Assembly (NCBI RefSeq): GCF_963676685.1
Contig: NC_092347.1
Coordinates: forward strand, 81,282,001-81,346,000
From: Mytilus edulis
Lineage: Eukaryota
DNA length: 64,000 nt
Direction of reading: 5' to 3'
In this document: one piece after another, positions 1 through 42,989 of the stretch
Position numbering within the stretch: the stretch's first letter is position 1
How the letters are laid out: the number at the start of each line of letters is the position of its first letter
The notes under the pieces: generated by a model
Seen by the model: only the letters and a program-made list of their open reading frames with translations
Told to the model about the DNA's origin: nothing
Databases searched by the model: none
Position numbers and translations under genes: made by a program

Positions 1-454
1 CCATTTATTCCGTTAGGAACTTATACTGTAATATTTATTCCTGTGGAAATAATATTCCAGAATATTTCTTCCTTTTGGAACTTATATTATGAAGGAACTT
101 CTATTCTGTGACAGTACTAAGATAAACCTACGACTGAGAAAATATATTTGGTCATATTAGCCATATTTGTGCTTGTAGTTACAAGTGTAAATGTACTAAT
201 TATAAAAAAAAGAAGATGTGGTATGATTGCCAATGAGACAACTCTCCACAAGATACCAAAAAATGACACAAAAATTTACAACTATAGGTCACCGTACGGC
301 CTTTAACAATGAGCAAAACCCATACCGCATAGTCAGCTTAAAAGGCCCCGGAATGACAATGTAAAACAATTCAAACGAGAAAACTAACGGACTAATTTAT
401 GCATGTATAAAAATGAACGAAAAACAAATATGTAACACATCAACAAACGACAAC

Positions 455-558
455 CACTGAATTATAGGCTCCTGACTTGGGAAAGGCACATACATACAGA
501 ATGTGGCGGGGTTAAACATTATAGAGGGATCCCAACCCTCCCCATACCCGAGACAGTA
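455..558 (-). ncRNA. Twister ribozyme, P5-type (family A)
   Basis: Minus strand: GGGU AU GGG GAGGG ... UAA CCC CGCC ACAU..AUGU G CCUU UCCCAAGU CAGG A GCCU. Predicted scissile bond U514/A513. One P4 mismatch in this copy. Confidence 0.68.
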
Positions 559-753
559 CAACATAAAAACGAACTATAAAAATCAGTTGAAAAAGGCTTA
601 ACTCATCAGATGGATAAAAATACAAATGGACGTGTACGGGTACTTGCACATCCCAACAACAAAAAGACATTAGATACAGATCTGAGAGTAATCGCAGTTA
701 ACTGACAACTAGTTCAAAGCCTCTAACAACTTATAAAAAACTTATGCATCTAA

Positions 754-821
754 GACTAAATTATCAATCCGTTCACATCCAACATCCAATGGATTTTGTG
801 TAAAGACGTCAAAAAACAGTC
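754..821 (-). promoter_or_regulatory. Type II SECIS-like element (family A)
   Basis: Minus strand: UGAC at 811-808; 12 nt to AAA at 796-794; ministem UCCA/UGGA; 9 of 11 positions paired in helix II; UGAU at 766-763; helix I GACUG/UAGUC. The base before UGA is U rather than the canonical A. Confidence 0.6.
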
Positions 822-1109
822 AGAGAAAAACATGGCATTGTGCAATGCCAATACAGGTATCGACAGATTGTAGATCCATGAATATGTATCTATATTTCTC
901 TAATTCTATGGAAATTATCCCTTTCCGAACCCATTGTACAAAAAAAATTGATCAACATGTGGTTGCCGGTGATCTCAAAAGATCATTGGACGATTTTAAG
1001 GGTCATAACCTTTTTAGCTAACTGGATTGATCACACAATATGCTAACAGGCGTTAATGAAATTGACAACTCAGAAAAAGAAAAAAATATTTTTTAATCAT
1101 TAGAGAAAC

Positions 1110-1250
1110 AGATTCTTAAATAGCTACTCGTGGATTATCGGATTTATCCAATCTCGATAGTTAAATTATAAATTTTAAAGTCCTCGAATTGATAATTTAA
1201 CTATCGAGATTGGATAAGTCCGATAATCCACTGGTATCAATGTAAGAATC
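1110..1250. repeat. Palindromic element, about 40-bp near-perfect arms
   Basis: GTGGATTATCGGATTTATCCAATCTCGATAGTTAAATTAT and its near-exact inverse. Confidence 0.85.
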
Positions 1251-1984: not shown

Positions 1985-2132
1985 CAAAACGGATAGTCCC
2001 TAAGTCATCAAATGGCAAAATCAAACTGAGCTCAAACACATCAAACGGTTTCGCATGATCGATAACAACTGTCATATTCCTGACTTGGTACAGGCATTTT
2101 CTTATGTAGAAAATGGTAGACCCTTATTAAAC
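1985..2132 (-). mobile_element. Fragment of a third related family (C) with a partial twister core
   Basis: Minus strand: UACC AUUUUCU-ACAUA-AGAAAAU G CCUG UACCAAGU CAGG A. P3 and P4 intact; 5' part disrupted. Confidence 0.5.
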
Positions 2133-2705
2133 TGACCATGATACTACCTTTTTACGGGTGTTTTTAGAAAGTCAATGTAAGTGGCATCTTGAGCTTACAT
2201 GATTAGACATATTTCTATCAGAAACTGGATATTTACAACCATAATTCTTTTTTGGTTGCGATTGATTAATCAGCGTATGTTGGTGGCAGTTCAGTGGTGT
2301 TTTCAGTTGGAATTGCATTCTCATTCTCAGAGTCTATATATATGTCTCTCTTTCTATAAGTGAAATTTTTTCTTATTTTTTTTTTTGCATAAACGTTTAA
2401 CATCTCATCATTTATAAACTTTGCAAGTATTATATGATTTATGATATTGCGTATTGGTACTCAAAGGTCCGTAATCGTGTTTTGTTATTTTAAAATTGTT
2501 ATGTGGTGCTAGGTTGACATCCAATTAAAATTTGGCGGGAAAAAAGAAGGCATCTCCCGAAGATTTGTTCCCAATATTTGTCTACACTGGCGACGACCAA
2601 AAGTATAAAAGTTAGTTAACAGGTCACACTTCAAATATTCAACATTTTAGACCAGTGTCTGAGAACAGTTAAAAAAATGTCAAAGATGTCAACTTCAAAA
2701 AGCCA

Positions 2706-15253: not shown

Positions 15254-15790
15254 AAAAATAAGGGGATGTGGTTTGATCGCCAACTCTCCACAAGAGACCA
15301 AATGACAATGAAATTTACATCAATAGGTCACTGAACTGCCTTCATCAATGAGCAGAGCTCGTATCGCATAAAGTCAGCTATAAAAGGCCCCGAAATGACA
15401 TAATATTTATGTAAAACAATTCAAACGAGAAAACTTACGAACTAATTTATGTCCAAAATAATGAACGAAAAACAAATATGTTACATAACAACAAACTGAT
15501 TTACAGGCTACTTGACTCGGGACCGGAACATACACAATGTGGCGAGGTTAAAACTCGTTTAAAGGAGCCAATCCTACCCTAACCTTGGGCATAAACTGGA
15601 TCCATGTTGTGTTCACTTATCTCATCAGATGAATACAAATTGAATACATCTTAGAAAAACAGAGTGGACATGGAAGGGTACTTTTACATCCAAACAACCA
15701 AAAGACTTTAAGTACAGATATTGGACTACTCGTAGTTACTGACAATTAGTTGAAAGTAATAACAACTAATACAAAAAGCATGCCTCTTAG
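15254..15790 (-). mobile_element. Family A copy, diverged, next to (TA)n
   Basis: Colinear with 204-750; decayed twister at about 15503-15590; abuts a TA microsatellite. Confidence 0.8.
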
Positions 15791-19268: not shown

Positions 19269-21153
19269 TATAAATGCTTTAGAAGTTTACTTAAATCTCC
19301 TACAAAAATCGCCAAAATCGGCTTTAGAGATCCCGGCCACTCATCTTCTAAGTGGAAAGGGGGTGGAATTAACTCGGTTCATACGACACAAAAACTATAA
19401 TAAACATAAAATTCGGTTCTTTGGCCAGGATGTTATCTTTTTGACAGATTCTGCATTTCCTTTCTCAATTTTATTCAGGACAAGTTTTATCTTAATTCTT
19501 GTTTTACATTTTCTAAAAGTAAACAAAATATAGGTGTTCTGCATCCATTCGAAAACAAATATTTTAATCTTTTATTCTTAAATGGTCTGTGTGGTAGGCC
19601 ATGAAGAAACAAAACAACAAAGAAAGGAAGAAAAATCATCAGTGATCATTATAAAATAAAAAATGCTAAAGGCTTGAGCTAATTCGAAAAATGATTAACA
19701 ATTTTGGATGCATACACGAGATTGTTTGAGCTGGTAATCATTGTTACAATGTTGTCAAATATATGTATACTATTTCAGTAATGGTCACAGTTCAATTTCG
19801 TTATATTAATTTTCTTTGATTGTGAATAAAATGAGATGCGGCATATTGTTTGACATATACTGAGTTGTTAACTTGATTGAAATAAATATGCAACTCTAGT
19901 ACTAAAGGTTATACAACGACGAGAAGACATTTTTTAAATTGATGATTTTGACTTAATGATCAGGAGTCATTGACTGTATCACCCGTCGTGTAAATCTCTA
20001 AATTCACGGATAGATAAGGTTAACAATCCGATAATAAACTTTCAATGGTATTTTTTAACGCCATGTAAAATCAGAAGCAGAAACAAATGCAATTTTGCAA
20101 TGTTGCGTTAATTTTCAAAAAAGATGATGCTGGATATATTACAATGATCTGTAAACATGAGGCAAGGACTAATGGAGGTAGTACAAGCTGGAAAAAAAAC
20201 ACATATAATTAGATCACATCAAATAATCTTGTTGTTCTTCATATTTTTTTCAATCTGGAAATGTCATACTATAGATGTTAAAAAACAATCTATTTTACTT
20301 TTGCATAATATTGAAATTTTCAAGTTCACTTCGAATCAAATTTCTCTGATAAGGGATATCCAGGCGAAACTTATTATAATTATAGTAATACATAAAAATA
20401 GTTGATATTTATTACGAACACGGACAGATTGAAATTTCGCACTTGAGATATATTTTTAATGTTATTTAATAAAGTTTTCAAATGTTATTTTTCGTTTCAA
20501 TCACTTTTAGTTTAACGTGGATTTTATTTTGTTTTGTAAACATTAACATACGTATATATTTATTGCAAGAAATATATCTGAAACGGATGAAATTGCACAC
20601 GCAGCTGCAGTTCTCATTTAACGATAACATTGAAGATAATACATGTAGAAAATTAGTCGGTTAACACTGTAAGCAAGAGAACGATGAAACTACTTAGAAA
20701 ATGGAGAGATTAGAAACCAATTTTATCTGTTTTGATTAAACCTATTCTATGGTATCAGAAAGTACCATTATTTCATCGTTGCTCATGATAAATCAGAAAT
20801 TAATTTAAAAAAAAAAATGAACAAAATAAAAAGAAATAGATACTCGTCATCGTCCTTTTTAATAGTTCGGTAAGTTGGCTCGTCCTGTAGTTATTCCTGC
20901 AGCCAGAATTGCACGTGCTAGGTAGGAACATCTATATTAAAAAAATCGTCCATATGCTAGGAAGGGATATCAGGCTACATTTTGTCAAGCACCAGGAGAA
21001 GAGTAAAGTAGTAAATTGCTGCAAACTTAATTCGGCGTCAAAGTGTATGATTCCAACGTTACGTTGAATTTTACGTTACATGTAGAACACATTTCATGTG
21101 TTACCAAAATTGAAATTTCTCAACTAATTTTTCACCGATCTATATATATATAG

Positions 21154-21441
21154 AAACTAGTCAAAACATTTACTAAATTTTATCATCGGTATAAAGACAT
21201 CATTCGTAAATATAGCTCAACATGCAGACTTCTAATACGTTCAGGTATTTCACATCCAATTTTTTATGGTAATATTCTTTATAAAGCACAAAGGTGTCAG
21301 TATTCACCTCAGAAACTTACAAAACCTTTAAATAGACTTATTAAGAAGGGATATAATTACGATACTGTTGTCAAGTCATTAAAGATTGCATATTTTGGCG
21401 TAAATATTGAGTCACTGATAAGGTCTTTGCATCGGAACTAA
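21154..21441 (+). pseudogene. C-terminal fragment of a retroelement ORF (KLVKTFTKFYHRYKDIIRKY...GISHPIFYGNILYK...LIKKGYNYD...LHRN*), probably PLE RT thumb/C-terminal extension
   Basis: Uninterrupted 95 codons with no start codon, so absent from the ORF track. The KLxKxFxKFYxR and GISxPxFYG motifs resemble the C-termini of invertebrate Penelope-like RT proteins (recognition from memory). No C-terminal GIY-YIG domain follows. Confidence 0.65.
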
Positions 21442-21483
21442 ACACATTTATTCTAAAAAAAAACAGTTGTTGGCATGACACGG

Positions 21484-21574
21484 GTTATGTTCTTCTCATA
21501 TATGTTATGATTGTATGATACTAAACCCCTAACGGGAAGGATTGTGCCTGATGTTCATATGATGAAATCATAAT
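21484..21574 (+). promoter_or_regulatory. Type II SECIS element (family B)
   Basis: AUGA at 21507-21510; 12 nt to AAA at 21523-21525; apical ministem CCC/GGG; helix II GUAUGAU/AUUGUGC plus CU/AG; 3' UGAU at 21549-21552 completes the GA/GA quartet; lower helix present. Starts about 65 nt after the ORF stop. Confidence 0.72.
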
Positions 21575-21757
21575 CTTTCAGTCAGTTTAATTGAAGTCTG
21601 GAGCTGGCATGTCAGTTAACTGCTAGTAGTCTGTTGTTATTTATGTATTATTGTCATTTTGTTTATTTTCTTTGGTTAAATCTTCTGACATCAGACTCGG
21701 ATTTCTCTTGAACTGAATTTTAATGTGCGTATTGTTATGCGTTTACTTTACTACATT

Positions 21758-21848
21758 GGTTAGAGGTATAGGGGGAGGGTTGAGATCTCACAAACATGTT
21801 TAACCCCGCCGCATTTTTGCGCCTGTCCCAAGTCAGGAGCCTCTGGCC
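21758..21848 (+). ncRNA. Twister ribozyme, P5-type permutation (family B)
   Basis: P5 GGUUAGAGGU/GCCUCUGGCC; P2 GGG/CCC; GAGGG at 21775-21779; U21801-A21802-A; CGCC; P3 GCA/UGC; G; P4 CCUG/CAGG with loop UCCCAAGU. Matches the twister core UAA-NNN-YGCC...G-P4-UCCCAAGY-P4...NNN-GAGGG. P1 is non-canonical. Confidence 0.72.
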
Positions 21849-23009
21849 TTTGTTAGTCTTGTATTATTTTAATTTTAGTTTCTTGTGTACAATTTGGAAA
21901 TTAGTATGGCGTTCATTATCACTGGACTAGTATATATTTGTTTAGGGGCCAGCTGAGGTACGCCTCCGGGTGCGGGAATTTCTCGCTACATTGAAGACCT
22001 GTTGGTGACCCTCTGCTGTTGTTTTTTATTTGGTCGGGTTGTTGTCTCTTTGACACATTCCCCATTTCCATTCTCAATTTTATATGTTACTGATTTTTTT
22101 GGATTCTTTTTGTTATTCCGTGATATTGATAAGTATTGCTCTCAACCCGGAACAGATTGCATTTTTTATTTCTACTCGCAAATTTTAAATTAAGTGCAGA
22201 ACTTGCAAAGGTTTTAAAACGAGTAAAACTTCGGAGCGTAATTGTACCAGCATTTCTTTTGCTTTTCCATCTTATAGCACTAAAGAGGCTTCTTTAAAAT
22301 TTACGAACAAAATATGTTTCGGATGATGCTGCCAATTCATTAATGAACGAATATATTACAGTGAAAACTACAAAAAAAACTTGTAAAGAAAAGTTTGAAC
22401 TTCAACAAACTTATTTTCAGCGCAACGAGGTATTTTTGTGTCCGTTATTTTTCGACATAGAGCTAGACGGAGTAGAAAGTTTGCCGGATATTTCATGTAT
22501 TATCACTTTATATTATCGGTTCAGTATAAGTCACGAAATTATTTTTGAATGTTAGTAAACCGACATTTGTTTCAAACGCGGATATGAAATTTTCGTGAAT
22601 GGAACCTTAGGACGCAGCCGGGGGCTTTTTAAAGAATCAAGTAGACATAGATTTTTTTTTCGGGGGAACGAAATAATACAATCTGCGGTAGATCTTTTTA
22701 AATATTGCGGGAAACATTTGAACGACACTAAGTTACTGTATTGTAAGCGCCAAATATTTAGATATGATGAGAGTATAGATCGTGACACAATATCTTTAAA
22801 ATCGTTCCTAATATTAAAAGTCTCTAGTATCAAGTTATTTTCATCTTTGGACGATGCTTAATTGACAATTAGGTACCTGTCATGTTATTCTTGTGAAAAC
22901 TATTTGGTTGGTTCTTACAAAGACTGCATAAATAATTCCATTTGAAGTATAAGGCAACCATACCCACAGTTGTCGGGAAAAACTGAAGCCGCAATTGGGG
23001 TCCCGCAGT

Positions 23010-23325
23010 AGATGTGGTATGATTGCCGATGAGACAATTAGCTCTCCACAAGAGACCAACATAACACAGAAATTAACAACTATATAGGTCAACGTACGGG
23101 CTTCAACAATGAGTAAAGCCCATACCGCATAGTCAGCTATAAAAGGCCCCGCAAAGACAATGTAAAACAAACGGGAAAACTAAGAGCCGTATTTATTTTA
23201 AAATGAATGAAAAACAAATATGTAACACATCAACAAAAGACAACCACTGAATTACGGGCTCCTAACTTGGGACAGGCACATACATAAATAATGTGGCGGG
23301 GTTAAAATGTTAGCGGGATCCCAAC
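23010..23325 (-). mobile_element. Family A copy, truncated within the twister
   Basis: Colinear with 213-536; ends at CCCAAC followed by TA-rich sequence. Confidence 0.85.
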
Positions 23326-40850: not shown

Positions 40851-42989
40851 CTGTGCTCGTACCACATCAGAAGGACACATATCAACTGAGCAATAATGTT
40901 TGGAACTTAGTTTTAAAAATGATGACAAAGTAACATTATGAAAATATTTTTATTAAGCTGAAATATACATTTATTCTTTACATGTTTATGTCTTGTAAGA
41001 TATTTTATTTCTTTCCCGTTTTTTAACATTTGCGTCTGGAAAGTTGAAATGTTTTAACTTAATCATTTGTGTTAATGGTTAAATATAAATTAATAATGAA
41101 AATTGTTAAAATTAAATCAATAAAGGAAATTATTGCCAAGGAAGTTACAAACACTACCAGGGGATAATCCATGATGATTTCTTTTTGGGTTATATGTTTC
41201 AGCACATGTATATTTGACCCCAACTTTAGCCTGGTAAACGTGTTGTCTCCTTGTGAAATATAAAACATATTAAAAATGACTTTCTGCTAAAGTCTTTTAT
41301 TTATATAAAGTTAAAACCTTCTTACTTTTAACTAGACAACACTCATGTCAGGTTTAATTCTTGTATATATGTGGATGAAAAATAAAAGTCCCCAAACATT
41401 AACATGGCAGCAATTGCTTTTACAGCCTTTAAGGCTATGATTCTTGCCAGTTGAGAAGCCTGTGATGTTCAGCAAGTAGGTGCCCAATATGATTAGTGTC
41501 CAGCCATAATCCCTTCAATTTTATAAGCATATGAATAAAGTCTGTAAAAAGAGATTTTACTGATAAAGTCAACTCTTAATAATTTTCAGAGGTTTTTTTT
41601 AGAAAGATATATAGATATGAAAAGATTTCTAGAAGAATTTGTCAGAAATAACACCATGTCACATGTTACAGTTAAGTGATGTTTGACAATGTGTAGTTCT
41701 TTGTAGGAAAGGTGTGACTGTTACTGTAGTTAACAAATGGTCTTAATAGGGTCAGGGTTGAGATCTCAAATTCTAGGTTAATCCTGTCACATATTCATGT
41801 ACCTGCCCCAAGTCGTGAGTAACCTCATATTTGATTGCTTTAGTACCTACATGTATCTGAGTTCCTATATCATACCTTATGCTTATTTGGATAATTTTGT
41901 GCTGATTACAGATATTAAATCATCAGTTTCTATTTAATTTGTTATATTTAGAGTTTTTAGACATCAACAACAATACATGTACTTCTAAGAATGATTTTTA
42001 TCAAGTATACACTAGTGTATCAGTACATCATAGCTTGACCATAAGTTCTTTGATATGAAACATTTCAGTTTTTTTGTCACTCTCCCCTTAAAAGAAAGAG
42101 TGTACTTTGATCTAGAAGCTTCTTTGTTTTTCTTCTTTTTGGGGATCAAATTGCTTCACTGACTGTTTGTCAATAGGTTCTTGAATTCTGCATTGAAACT
42201 TTATTTTTCTTTCTGCCAGAAAATGTGTATCAAAGTTTTTAGAAGATGTAAAGTGGGTCAATGAATTGTTTTTAATTTGTATCTATATATGACCTGTTAT
42301 TTTAAATGCCTTTACGTCCATATTTAAACTTAACTGAGAAGCTTATTTTCCTTTACTTAGTTTATGCTTTGAGTACAAATGATCTTTATCAAATATTTGT
42401 AGCTCAAACTAATTTGAAAAGTTATAAAAGGAGACACATTCAACACCGAAGCAATTGATCAGCATTTATTGAATACTATTAGGATATGCCTTTTGAAATT
42501 GTAAATTTTATAATCAAAAAGTCTTTTTACAAAGTTTAAAAGGTGCTTTAATGACTCGTTATTAAAGTTTAAATCATTCGTTTTGAAGGATTGGACCATG
42601 GTTTGAATATGACTGGTAAATAAAGGCAATGTATGATTGGGGGGAGTGGACTAAGGTTTGGTTGTGAAAAATACTTATTACACCAAAAACATTTTAATAA
42701 AATTCCTATATATAACTAATTTGAAATACAAGAAGCAAAAAATACTTCAGTCAAACAGTTTTTGGCCAGCCATAAAGTATACATACAAATTTGTCCTTCA
42801 TTAATTAAAGCTCTAACTGTCCCAAATGGTTTAATTTGTGCTTTACTATTTATCATTTAGATCATTAAAAACATCTTCCACTGGGATATTATTGTAAAGG
42901 TCTATACATTTCAGTTGTCATATTATAGTGACTTCCAACATTGTAAATATTGTTTTTAAGATAAATATAAAACAAACTGGTTCAGTTTT

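What the first reader, a model, noticed from the sequence alone, without database searches (positions are those of the whole stretch)
21154..22084. Retroelement 3' cassette combining ORF end, SECIS, twister ribozyme and a structured terminus
Seen: after a (TA)n tract, a 95-codon ORF end, a type II SECIS fold (21507-21552), a P5-type twister fold (21758-21848) and a multibranch motif (21945-22018), all on one strand. Family A (204-890, minus) is clearly diverged in sequence yet has the same three RNA modules in the same order. Established: Naiad Penelope-like elements have an N-terminal GIY-YIG and a C-terminal RT, favour microsatellites, include selenoprotein-encoding lineages in clams and spiders, and were reported to lack canonical hammerheads. 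Inference: this is a selenium-dependent Naiad lineage that uses twister instead of hammerhead to process its tandem (pseudo-LTR) transcripts. Cleavage 3' of the SECIS would leave ORF and SECIS on the same product. I am not aware of this combination being described, but could not search.
Basis: partly seen in the sequence, partly recalled or inferred. Interest (0 to 1): 0.92.

Follow-up and report, generated by a model that had tools for sequence, protein, structure and literature searches.

The report
Twister-like ribozyme in selenoprotein Naiad retroelement
This stretch is a dead, front-truncated copy of a mussel Penelope-like (Naiad) jumping gene; intact relatives need selenocysteine to be translated, and their tail carries a conserved twister-ribozyme fold where other Penelope-like elements carry a hammerhead.

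Summary
Window 21154-22084 (+) is a 5'-truncated copy, next to a (TA)n tract, of an abundant Naiad-type Penelope-like element. I infer the genome is Mytilus edulis.

- **Element:** longer copies carry one reading frame of about 1005 codons, with an N-terminal GIY-YIG nuclease, CxC and DKA motifs, and a C-terminal RT.
- **Selenocysteine:** the frame has four in-frame TGA codons at fixed places. They align to conserved cysteines in relatives.
- **SECIS:** a SECIS follows the stop codon. It scores 23 bits here and 32 bits in a cleaner copy (Rfam cut-off 35). SECIS matches occur in 8 of 14 TGA-type loci against 1 of 20 Cys-type loci.
- **Twister:** positions 21758-21848 match Rfam Twister-P5 end to end at 23 bits (cut-off 37.6).
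  - All loop nucleotides match except one.
  - P2, P3, P4, P5 and both pseudoknots covary across families.
  - The same module lies downstream of the RT in 27 of 38 metagenome Naiad loci, in TGA-type and Cys-type families alike.
- **P1:** the stem is missing. Two palindromes replace it, which suggests the RNA acts as a dimer.
- **Not shown:** self-cleavage was not tested. Copies are not enriched for 5' ends at the predicted cut. The "multibranch" motif and a SECIS in family A are not supported.

Other first-stage readers flagged the same module elsewhere in this genome.

The parts
21141..21153 (.). (TA)n tract directly before the truncated copy. This is the preferred Naiad target.
   Evidence: Sequence. 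Craig et al. 2021 (PMC8557442) report a (TA)n insertion bias for Naiads.
21154..21441 (+). Last 95 codons of the Naiad EN-RT frame plus the TAA stop. The copy is 5'-truncated.
   Evidence: Translation. 90-98% identical copies continue 5' into the RT. tblastn against the RT piece.
21497..21561 (+). SECIS (form 2): AUGA...AAA...mini-stem...UGAU. This copy has one G>U change in helix II compared with other copies.
   Evidence: Rfam SECIS_1 scores 23.2 bits here and 32.3 bits in L052. Copy alignment. SECIS matches in 8 of 14 TGA-type loci against 1 of 20 Cys-type loci.
21758..21848 (+). Type-P5 twister-like fold. P5 21758-21766 / 21840-21848. P2 21771-21774 / 21804-21807. L1 GAGGG 21775-21779. P3 21810-21821. 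P4 21822-21825 / 21834-21837. L4 UCCCAAGU 21826-21833. T1 21777-21779 / 21827-21829. T2 21808-21809 / 21832-21833.
   Evidence: Rfam RF02684 23.1 bits, full model. The minimum-energy fold recovers P5, P3 and P4. Covariation.
21780..21801 (+). Linker where P1 should be. Palindrome 1 is (U)GAGAUCUC(A) at 21782-21789. Palindrome 2 is AAACAUGUUU at 21792-21801.
   Evidence: 26 of 27 distinct family sequences have a perfect palindrome of at least 8 nt here, against 9% of shuffled linkers. Variants also seen.
21801..21802 (+). Predicted scissile bond, U21801|A21802. This is inferred, not shown.
   Evidence: Position of the UAA in the Rfam alignment. Twister cleaves at U-A (PMC5408937).
21908..21997 (+). 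A 90-bp segment that holds most of the 'multibranch motif'. It is absent from one tandem locus (L046).
   Evidence: BLAST of copies against the tandem unit. Folds.
21998..22084 (+). Terminal 86-87 bp ending ...CATTCTCAATTTTA. This is the common 3' end of all copies. It recurs directly upstream of full-length copies as the last part of their longer partial upstream copies (pLTR).
204..890 (-). Family A copy, related 3'-region element. Its twister module at 471-544 is decayed: one G is missing in L1/P2 and P4 reads CCUU.
   Evidence: The family A majority form in the genome sample is canonical.
23261..23322 (-). A-type copy truncated inside the twister. It starts at the linker.
   Evidence: 32.2 bits.
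41749..41817 (+). A further, decayed twister-like module from another repeat family.
   Evidence: 34.9 bits.
15511..15581 (-). A further, decayed twister-like module.
   Evidence: 23.1 bits.

Best explanation
**Shown**
- The stretch is a 5'-truncated insertion of a Naiad-type Penelope-like retroelement.
- Full-length members are about 3.9 kb. They encode one EN-RT protein whose frame holds four UGA codons at conserved cysteine positions.
- The 3' UTR carries, in order, a SECIS, a type-P5 twister fold about 200 nt further on, and the conserved 3' end.
- The twister fold keeps the loop nucleotides, P2, P3, P4, P5 and both pseudoknots. It lacks P1, which is replaced by two palindromes.
- The module is shared by many Naiad families, whether or not they use selenocysteine.

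**Inferred**
- The UGA codons are read as selenocysteine with the help of the SECIS.
- The RNA cuts itself between U21801 and A21802. It probably does so only when two copies pair through the palindromes, either as two RNAs or as two units of a tandem transcript.
- On this reading it does for Naiads what the dimeric hammerhead is thought to do for other Penelope-like elements. A cut there leaves the ORF and SECIS on the 5' product.

The copy in this window is itself inert.
For: **Element**
- At least 40 copies, 90-98% identical, share one 3' end and have varied 5' ends.
- In L048 and L049 one frame runs from Met to TAA. It shows C-x4-U-x2-C, GIY...YVGET, CNC, PADKA and RYLDD.
- A head-to-tail array with a 3,874-bp period, and partial upstream copies.

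**Selenocysteine**
- The same four TGA positions occur in 6 of 6 copies; one copy reads CGA at the fourth.
- They align to Cys in read-through relatives.
- 27 of 50 metagenome loci have TGA at DKA+8.
- SECIS matches in 8 of 14 against 1 of 20 loci.

**Twister**
- Rfam scores 23.1 bits over the full model.
- 11,087 genome matches to a descriptor, against 0 for the reversed control.
- One P2 pair reads C-G 78, U-A 18, A-U 2.
- One T1 pair reads G-C 77, A-U 20.
- The inner 5 bp of P5 are entirely different yet paired in family C, in 1,308 copies.
- My own model hits the + strand downstream of the RT in 27 of 38 informative loci, with 35 + strand hits against 1 - strand hit.
- 89% of cells pair against 73% in shuffles (0 of 500 shuffles reach it). 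The pseudoknots were not part of the model.
- P1 is dispensable in vitro (PMC5408937).

**Palindromes**
- 26 of 27 family sequences against 9% of shuffled linkers.
Against: - Both Rfam matches are below their gathering scores. The whole-genome Rfam scan gave nothing, but it scored only 79 of 31,236 candidates.
- There is no P1 helix.
- The second T2 pair is G.U in the mussel families.
- A second flavour of the module often has a C.A or C.U mismatch inside P2.
- 5'-truncated copies show no spike at the predicted cut: about 8 of the 100 listed there, against about 6-7 of 69 at a control site 7 nt upstream.
- Upstream pLTRs start at varied places, none at the cut.
- An efficient ribozyme in a 3' UTR would remove the 3' end that the RT needs.
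- In a Poseidon element the hammerhead was not needed for insertion in vitro (PMC11167929).
- No RNA data could be obtained.
Confidence: 0.6

Rival explanations
1. The module descends from a twister but no longer cuts, or cuts only negligibly. On this reading it is kept as a structured 3'-UTR element for another job, such as recognition by the Naiad RT/EN, RNA dimerisation or packaging through the palindromes, or RNA stability.
For: - P1 is lost in every family, and the palindromes are under stronger visible constraint than any P1.
- There is no excess of copies starting at the predicted cut.
- All genomic copies keep the 283 nt 3' of the cut, so the templates were uncut.
- The type II flavour carries a P2 mismatch.
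- The PLE hammerhead is dispensable for insertion in vitro (PMC11167929).
Against: - Every loop nucleotide tied to catalysis is kept across families 34-98% related: the U-A site, GAGGG and UCCCAAG.
- Both pseudoknots covary. That is hard to explain unless the active-site fold itself is selected.
- P1-less twisters cleave at near wild-type rate (PMC5408937).
Confidence: 0.3
2. The twister resemblance is chance or a search artefact, and the region is just conserved repeat sequence without RNA structure.
For: - Both Rfam scores are below threshold.
- The whole-genome Rfam scan was empty.
- The minimum-energy fold has a z-score of only -1.8.
- Related copies inflate pair counts.
Against: - The match runs end to end over the Rfam model, with all unpaired conserved letters identical except one.
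- Compensatory changes occur in P2 (all four Watson-Crick types), P3, P4, P5, T1 and T2.
- Slid controls give 27-49% paired against 89%.
- Position and strand are fixed relative to the RT in unrelated contigs.
Confidence: 0.04
3. The in-frame TGA codons are plain stop codons or decay, and the element is not a selenoprotein gene.
For: - The SECIS is below the Rfam cut-off in this family.
- Pfam recognises nothing in the separate ORF pieces.
Against: - The same four positions are TGA in 6 of 6 copies; one copy reads CGA at the fourth. The frame is kept across them, and L048 and L049 have no other stop.
- All four align to Cys in relatives.
- 27 of 50 independent loci have TGA at DKA+8.
- SECIS matches track the TGA-type loci.
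- The same positions were published for clam and spider Naiads (PMC8557442).
Confidence: 0.05

Closest known systems
Selenoprotein-encoding Naiad elements (Naiad_Scon, Naiad_Mmer in clams; Naiad_Sdum, Naiad_Smim in spiders; Craig et al. 2021, PMC8557442)
   Same: - N-terminal GIY-YIG, then CxC, then DKA-type RT.
- UGA at the Cys before GIY-YIG, at the first Cys of the CCHH finger, and 8 residues after DKA.
- SECIS just after the stop.
- (TA)n targets, pLTRs and tails, and no hammerhead.
   Different: - A mussel family, which the paper did not report as selenoprotein-encoding.
- Four UGAs that combine the clam positions with the second Cys of the CX2-5CxxC finger, seen there only in a spider family.
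- The SECIS is form 2 by fold and lies 56 nt after the stop. The paper reports type I, 1-21 nt after the stop.
- The paper does not mention a twister.
Hammerhead ribozymes in the pLTRs of canonical Penelope-like elements, which cleave as dimers (Cervera & de la Pena 2014; Lunse et al. 2017, as cited in PMC6765202)
   Same: - A small self-cleaving ribozyme motif sits in the repeated terminal region of a PLE.
- A stem is reduced and replaced by palindromic sequence, which points to action as a dimer or in tandem transcripts.
   Different: - The ribozyme class is different: twister, not hammerhead.
- Dimer action is only inferred here, from the palindromes.
Type-P5 twister ribozyme (Rfam RF02684; Roth et al. 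2014; review PMC5408937)
   Same: - The permutation opens in P5.
- P2 has 4 bp and P4 is present.
- L1 GAGGG, the UAA site and L4 UCCCAAG are kept.
- T1 and T2 pseudoknots and an optional P3 are present.
   Different: - There is no P1 hairpin. A linker of about 21 nt with two palindromes stands in its place.
- The last L4 letter is U, which makes a T2 G.U pair.
- The score is 14 bits below the family cut-off.
- Cleavage is untested.
Twister variants at the 5' end of Perere-3/RTE non-LTR retrotransposons in Schistosoma (Liu et al. 2021, PMC8501958; also noted in PMC7761336)
   Same: Twister-class motifs are carried in thousands of copies by a retroelement.
   Different: - Those sit at the 5' end of non-LTR elements and define the RNA 5' end, with target-site duplications next to the cut.
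- Here the motif is in the 3' UTR of a PLE, and element ends do not coincide with the cut.

Membership tests
Naiad clade of Penelope-like elements | One ORF with a GIY-YIG endonuclease N-terminal to the RT | tested here: met
   L048 and L049 show ...IIYLLT-U-NKPGCGIQYVGETGRYLSKRTQEH... upstream of PADKA...RYLDD in one frame. Distant relatives of the N-terminal piece carry Pfam PF01541.
Naiad clade of Penelope-like elements | CxC motif in the linker, DKA instead of DKG, and a CX2-5CxxC finger before GIY-YIG | tested here: met
   TSCNCS, PADKAANN and C-HAKK-U-LT-C were read directly. DKA is present in all but two of the 50 metagenome loci.
Naiad clade of Penelope-like elements | RT domain recognised by profile | tested here: inconclusive
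   Pfam finds nothing in this element's own pieces. RVT_1 appears only weakly, in 4 of 31 homologues. The PDB gives nothing. The Atlas scores 0.94-0.98 to clusters carrying PF26215/PF00078. The motifs PMGTNCAP and RYLDD are present.
Naiad clade of Penelope-like elements | pLTR / partial tandem structure, tail, and (TA)n targets | tested here: met
   Tandem array with a 3,874-bp period. Upstream partial copies of 153-479 bp. (TA)n at this copy.
Naiad clade of Penelope-like elements | No canonical hammerhead | tested here: met
   No hammerhead match in the window at gathering score, in 20900-22400 at E <= 10, or in 34 Naiad loci at E <= 1.
Naiad clade of Penelope-like elements | Placement inside the Naiad clade on an RT tree; IFD insertion | not tested
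   No reference Naiad or other PLE sequences were at hand.
Selenoprotein gene with eukaryotic SECIS | In-frame UGA at positions that are Cys in homologues | tested here: met
Selenoprotein gene with eukaryotic SECIS | SECIS in the 3' UTR reaching the curated score | tested here: inconclusive
   23.2 bits in this copy and 32.3 bits in L052, against a cut-off of 35. One related family reaches 38.8 bits. SECIS matches occur in 8 of 14 TGA-type loci against 1 of 20 Cys-type loci. SECISearch3 was not available.
Selenoprotein gene with eukaryotic SECIS | Selenocysteine actually inserted | not testable with these tools
   Needs 75Se labelling, mass spectrometry or a reporter.
Twister ribozyme (type P5) | Conserved loop nucleotides of L1 and L4 and the U-A site | tested here: met
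   GAGGG, UAA and GUCCCAAG are identical to the Rfam consensus. Only the last L4 letter differs, C>U.
Twister ribozyme (type P5) | P2 (4 bp), P4 and the closing P5 helix | tested here: met
   Covariation.
Twister ribozyme (type P5) | Pseudoknots T1 and T2 | tested here: met
   T1 reads G-C or A-U by family; L065 has A-U, G-C, A-U. The first T2 pair reads G.U 12, A-U 7, C-G 4. The pseudoknots were not part of the search model.
Twister ribozyme (type P5) | P1 helix next to the cleavage site | tested here: not met
   The 21-nt linker cannot form it. P1 is phylogenetically conserved but dispensable for cleavage in vitro (PMC5408937).
Twister ribozyme (type P5) | Rfam gathering score | tested here: not met
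   23.1 against 37.6 bits. A second family gives only a partial twister-P1 match of 15.4 bits.
Twister ribozyme (type P5) | Site-specific self-cleavage | not testable with these tools
The indirect genomic test was negative.

The most novel reading that the evidence does not exclude
Naiad Penelope-like elements as a clade carry a new architectural class of twister. In it P1 is replaced by two self-complementary segments, so the ribozyme is active only as a homodimer or between neighbouring units of a tandem transcript. That would be the first obligate-dimer twister. It would also be a convergent counterpart of the dimeric hammerheads of other PLEs, and would explain why Naiads 'lack' a ribozyme.
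Probability: 0.3. Interest if true: 0.9.

Novelty: new variant of a known kind. Interest (0 to 1): 0.8.

Why it matters
- **It fills a stated gap.** Naiads were described as the PLE group without a ribozyme, and their success was taken to show that ribozymes are dispensable or parasitic. A conserved twister fold at the equivalent place would mean that PLEs as a whole keep a self-cleaving motif but swap its class. The same pattern is seen in bacteria and in circular RNAs.
- **It adds many unannotated twister-like sequences.** This genome alone holds more than 11,000. Rfam thresholds miss them.
- **It points to a testable dimer mechanism** through the two palindromes.
- **It widens the known range of selenoprotein-encoding transposons.** It adds a mussel, and 27 of 50 marine-metagenome loci have TGA at the DKA+8 position. 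This matters for repeat annotation and for how genes might acquire a SECIS.

Tried and rejected
**Searches that gave nothing**
- Rfam at gathering score on the whole window: no match.
- Rfam RF02684 on the whole genome: no match, but only 79 of 31,236 candidates were scored.
- Pfam on the ORF pieces: nothing.
- PDB by sequence and by profile: nothing useful.
- Atlas for the EN piece: no usable hit.

**Test for cleavage-defined 5' ends: negative**
- Copies whose base before AACCCCGCC... is not T number 125. About 8 of the 100 listed have unrelated upstream sequence.
- At a control site 7 nt upstream there are 69, of which about 6-7 have unrelated upstream sequence.
- Upstream pLTR starts lie at window-equivalent 21605, 21723, 21824, 21895 and 21931. 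None is at 21802.

**Claims not supported**
- Multibranch motif.
- SECIS in family A.

After that I used only pattern counts and their short printed matches.

**Other**
- One literature search was badly designed and uninformative.
All statements rest on individual copies.
Full report
**What is at the coordinates**

The window has about 31% G+C. From 21154 to 21438 the + strand reads 95 codons and then TAA. A (TA)n run lies directly before it.

The same 931 bases occur in at least 40 places in the window's genome at 90-98% identity, out of 1,136 first-look candidates. All share the 3' end ...CATTCTCAATTTTA. Most other copies continue 5' into common sequence, so the window copy is 5'-truncated.

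A database protein named for Mytilus edulis sits on a contig of 108,102,362 bp. That is exactly the length of contig C2 of this genome. I therefore infer that the genome is M. edulis.

**The element**

Longer copies extend into an RT and, further 5', a GIY-YIG-like domain. A search with the N-terminal piece found at least 189 places, many with the same 424-codon open stretch ending in TGA.

In L048 and L049 one frame runs from MKLRNGK... to ...SLIRSLHRN-TAA. It is about 1005 codons long and is broken only by four TGA codons. Read directly, it shows:
- C-x4-U-x2-C
- GIY...YVGET...EH...N
- CNC
- PADKA
- PMGTNCAP
- RYLDD

These are the diagnostic features that Craig et al. 2021 give for Naiads (PMC8557442).

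Other structural observations:
- One locus holds three head-to-tail units with a 3,874-bp period.
- Full-length copies are preceded by partial upstream copies of 153-479 bp.

Profile evidence for the domains is weak:
- Pfam is silent on this element's own pieces.
- RVT_1 shows up in only 4 of 31 homologues.
- PF01541 is on record for three distant relatives of the N-terminal piece.
- The Atlas places the RT piece next to PF26215/PF00078 clusters.

I built no consensus.

**Selenocysteine**

The four TGA codons are at the same places in six of six copies. One copy has CGA at the fourth.
- The fourth TGA lies 8 residues after DKA. It aligns to Cys in the closest read-through relatives, which are 76-80% identical.
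- The first three align to Cys in distant Naiads.
- In 50 Naiad loci from marine metagenomes, the DKA+8 codon is TGA in 27 and Cys in 23.

The only SECIS-like site in the 3' UTR is 21497-21561, at 23.2 bits. The window copy differs from other copies by one G>U change that breaks a helix II pair. A 98% identical contig scores 32.3 bits.

Across loci, SECIS_1 matches at E <= 1 occur in 8 of 14 TGA-type loci. They are always on the + strand, between the stop codon and the twister. They occur in only 1 of 20 Cys-type loci.

This is a new member, from a mussel, of the published selenoprotein Naiads.

**The twister fold**

A 1.5-kb Rfam scan missed it. A 121-nt scan gives Twister-P5 at 23.1 bits, E 0.0031, over the whole model.
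- P2 is GGGG/CCCC.
- L1 is GAGGG.
- The site is UAA.
- L2 is GC.
- P3 is a 4-bp hairpin.
- P4 is CCUG/CAGG.
- L4 is UCCCAAGU.
- P5 is a 9-bp closing helix.

The minimum-energy fold recovers P5, P3 and P4.

*Within the genome.* A descriptor with free letters at four paired positions matches 11,087 times, and the reversed control matches 0 times. I counted the first 100 matches by eye:

| Pair | Counts |
|---|---|
| P2 pair | C-G 78, U-A 18, A-U 2, mismatched 2 |
| T1 pair | G-C 77, A-U 20, G.U 1, mismatched 2 |

- These changes are family-wide. Family C alone has 1,913 exact cores.
- In 1,308 family C copies the inner P5 is UCAGA/UCUGA, against AGAGG/CCUCU here.
- The family changes favour the twister pairs over the competing minimum-energy helix.

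*In other Naiads.* I fetched 80 Naiad loci by their RT alone.
- A model built from five mussel-type cores, holding only P2, P3 and P4, hits the + strand downstream of the RT in 30 loci. That is 27 of the 38 loci with at least 600 nt of downstream sequence. Most hits lie 320-400 nt after the RT match.
- A second-round model gives 35 + strand hits against 1 - strand hit.

*Pair counts on that alignment*:

| Measure | Observed | Control |
|---|---|---|
| Cells that pair | 89.1% | 73.3% in shuffles (0 of 500 reach it) |
| Cells that pair, partners slid | - | 27-49% |
| Pairs changed on both sides | 13 of 16 | - |

- The pseudoknots were not in the model and still pair. One family has T1 A-U, G-C, A-U. 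The first T2 pair varies: G.U 12, A-U 7, C-G 4.
- The nested pairs lean towards the model, and related rows inflate the counts. The number of independent events is smaller than the number of cells.

The module occurs in TGA-type and in Cys-type families.

**P1 and the palindromes**

No P1 can form. Instead, 26 of 27 distinct family sequences have a perfect palindrome of at least 8 nt right after L1. The sequence differs from family to family: GAGAUCUC, GGGAUCCC, UGGAUCCA, UGGUACCA, UGGGCCCA, GGGCGCCC, GCAGCUGC and others. Only 9% of shuffled linkers have one.

Many families have a second palindrome of the form AAAC..GUUU that ends at the U of the cleavage site. The two central letters covary. 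A hairpin would not need that, so I read these as duplexes between two copies.

P1 is dispensable for cleavage in vitro (PMC5408937). PLE hammerheads are reported to act as dimers (cited in PMC6765202).

**Does it cut?**

This was not shown.
- Copies starting exactly at the predicted bond are no more common than copies starting at a control site.
- pLTR starts vary.

This matches what was found for a Poseidon hammerhead (PMC11167929). It leaves a non-catalytic role open.

**Other claims**
- The multibranch motif is not supported. It lies mostly in a 90-bp segment that one tandem locus lacks.
- Family A shares the twister module and the terminal blocks but shows no SECIS.

**Novelty**

Full-text searches found no paper that links twister with Penelope-like or Naiad elements. 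Twister variants are known at the 5' end of RTE elements (PMC8501958, PMC7761336). Other first-stage notes of this scan flag the same module elsewhere in this genome. I saw no checked report among them.

Noticed in passing
window 1127-1234: A near-perfect hairpin of about 108 nt (long inverted repeat). Several Rfam miRNA-precursor models hit it on both strands, well below their cut-offs. It looks like a MITE-type palindrome next to the family A copy.
   Followed up: no
window 2079-2155 (-): Another repeat family keeps only a P4/L4-like hairpin, GCCUG UACCAAGU CAGG, without the rest of the twister (16 bits with my model). It may be a relic of the same module.
   Followed up: no
L061-L063, L070, L071, L075, L078, L081, L085 (metagenome Naiad loci): A second flavour of the module: L1 GAGG-UU, L2 CC, L4 U[U/G]CCAAGG, P4 ACCG/CGGU. 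T2 is two G-C pairs. P2 repeatedly has a C.A or C.U mismatch at its second pair.
   Followed up: partly
G000:C1:6233557-6243117 and L046 (G000:C8:3784000-3793999): Head-to-tail arrays of the element. Three twister cores are spaced about 4,750 bp apart on C1. Three units with a 3,874-bp period lie on C8, and these lack the 90-bp segment.
   Followed up: partly
proteins P0125, P0135, P0167: Database proteins of Naiad N-termini have W exactly where this family has TGA. This suggests gene calling with a TGA=Trp code in metagenome assemblies, which hides selenoprotein transposons.
   Followed up: no
L055 (metagenome locus, 80% identical RT): The closest relative with Cys at DKA+8 still gives a SECIS_1 match (28 bits). 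It may keep UGA codons at the N-terminal positions. The N-terminus was not examined.
   Followed up: no
L069, L091, L092, L097, L098, L107, L110, L113, L115, L125: Naiad loci with at least 600 nt after the RT match but no full twister-model hit (L107 gives only a weak partial match cut off by the contig end). Most are among the more distant relatives of this family; L069 (50% identical) is an exception. The module may be absent there, or too diverged for the model.
   Followed up: no
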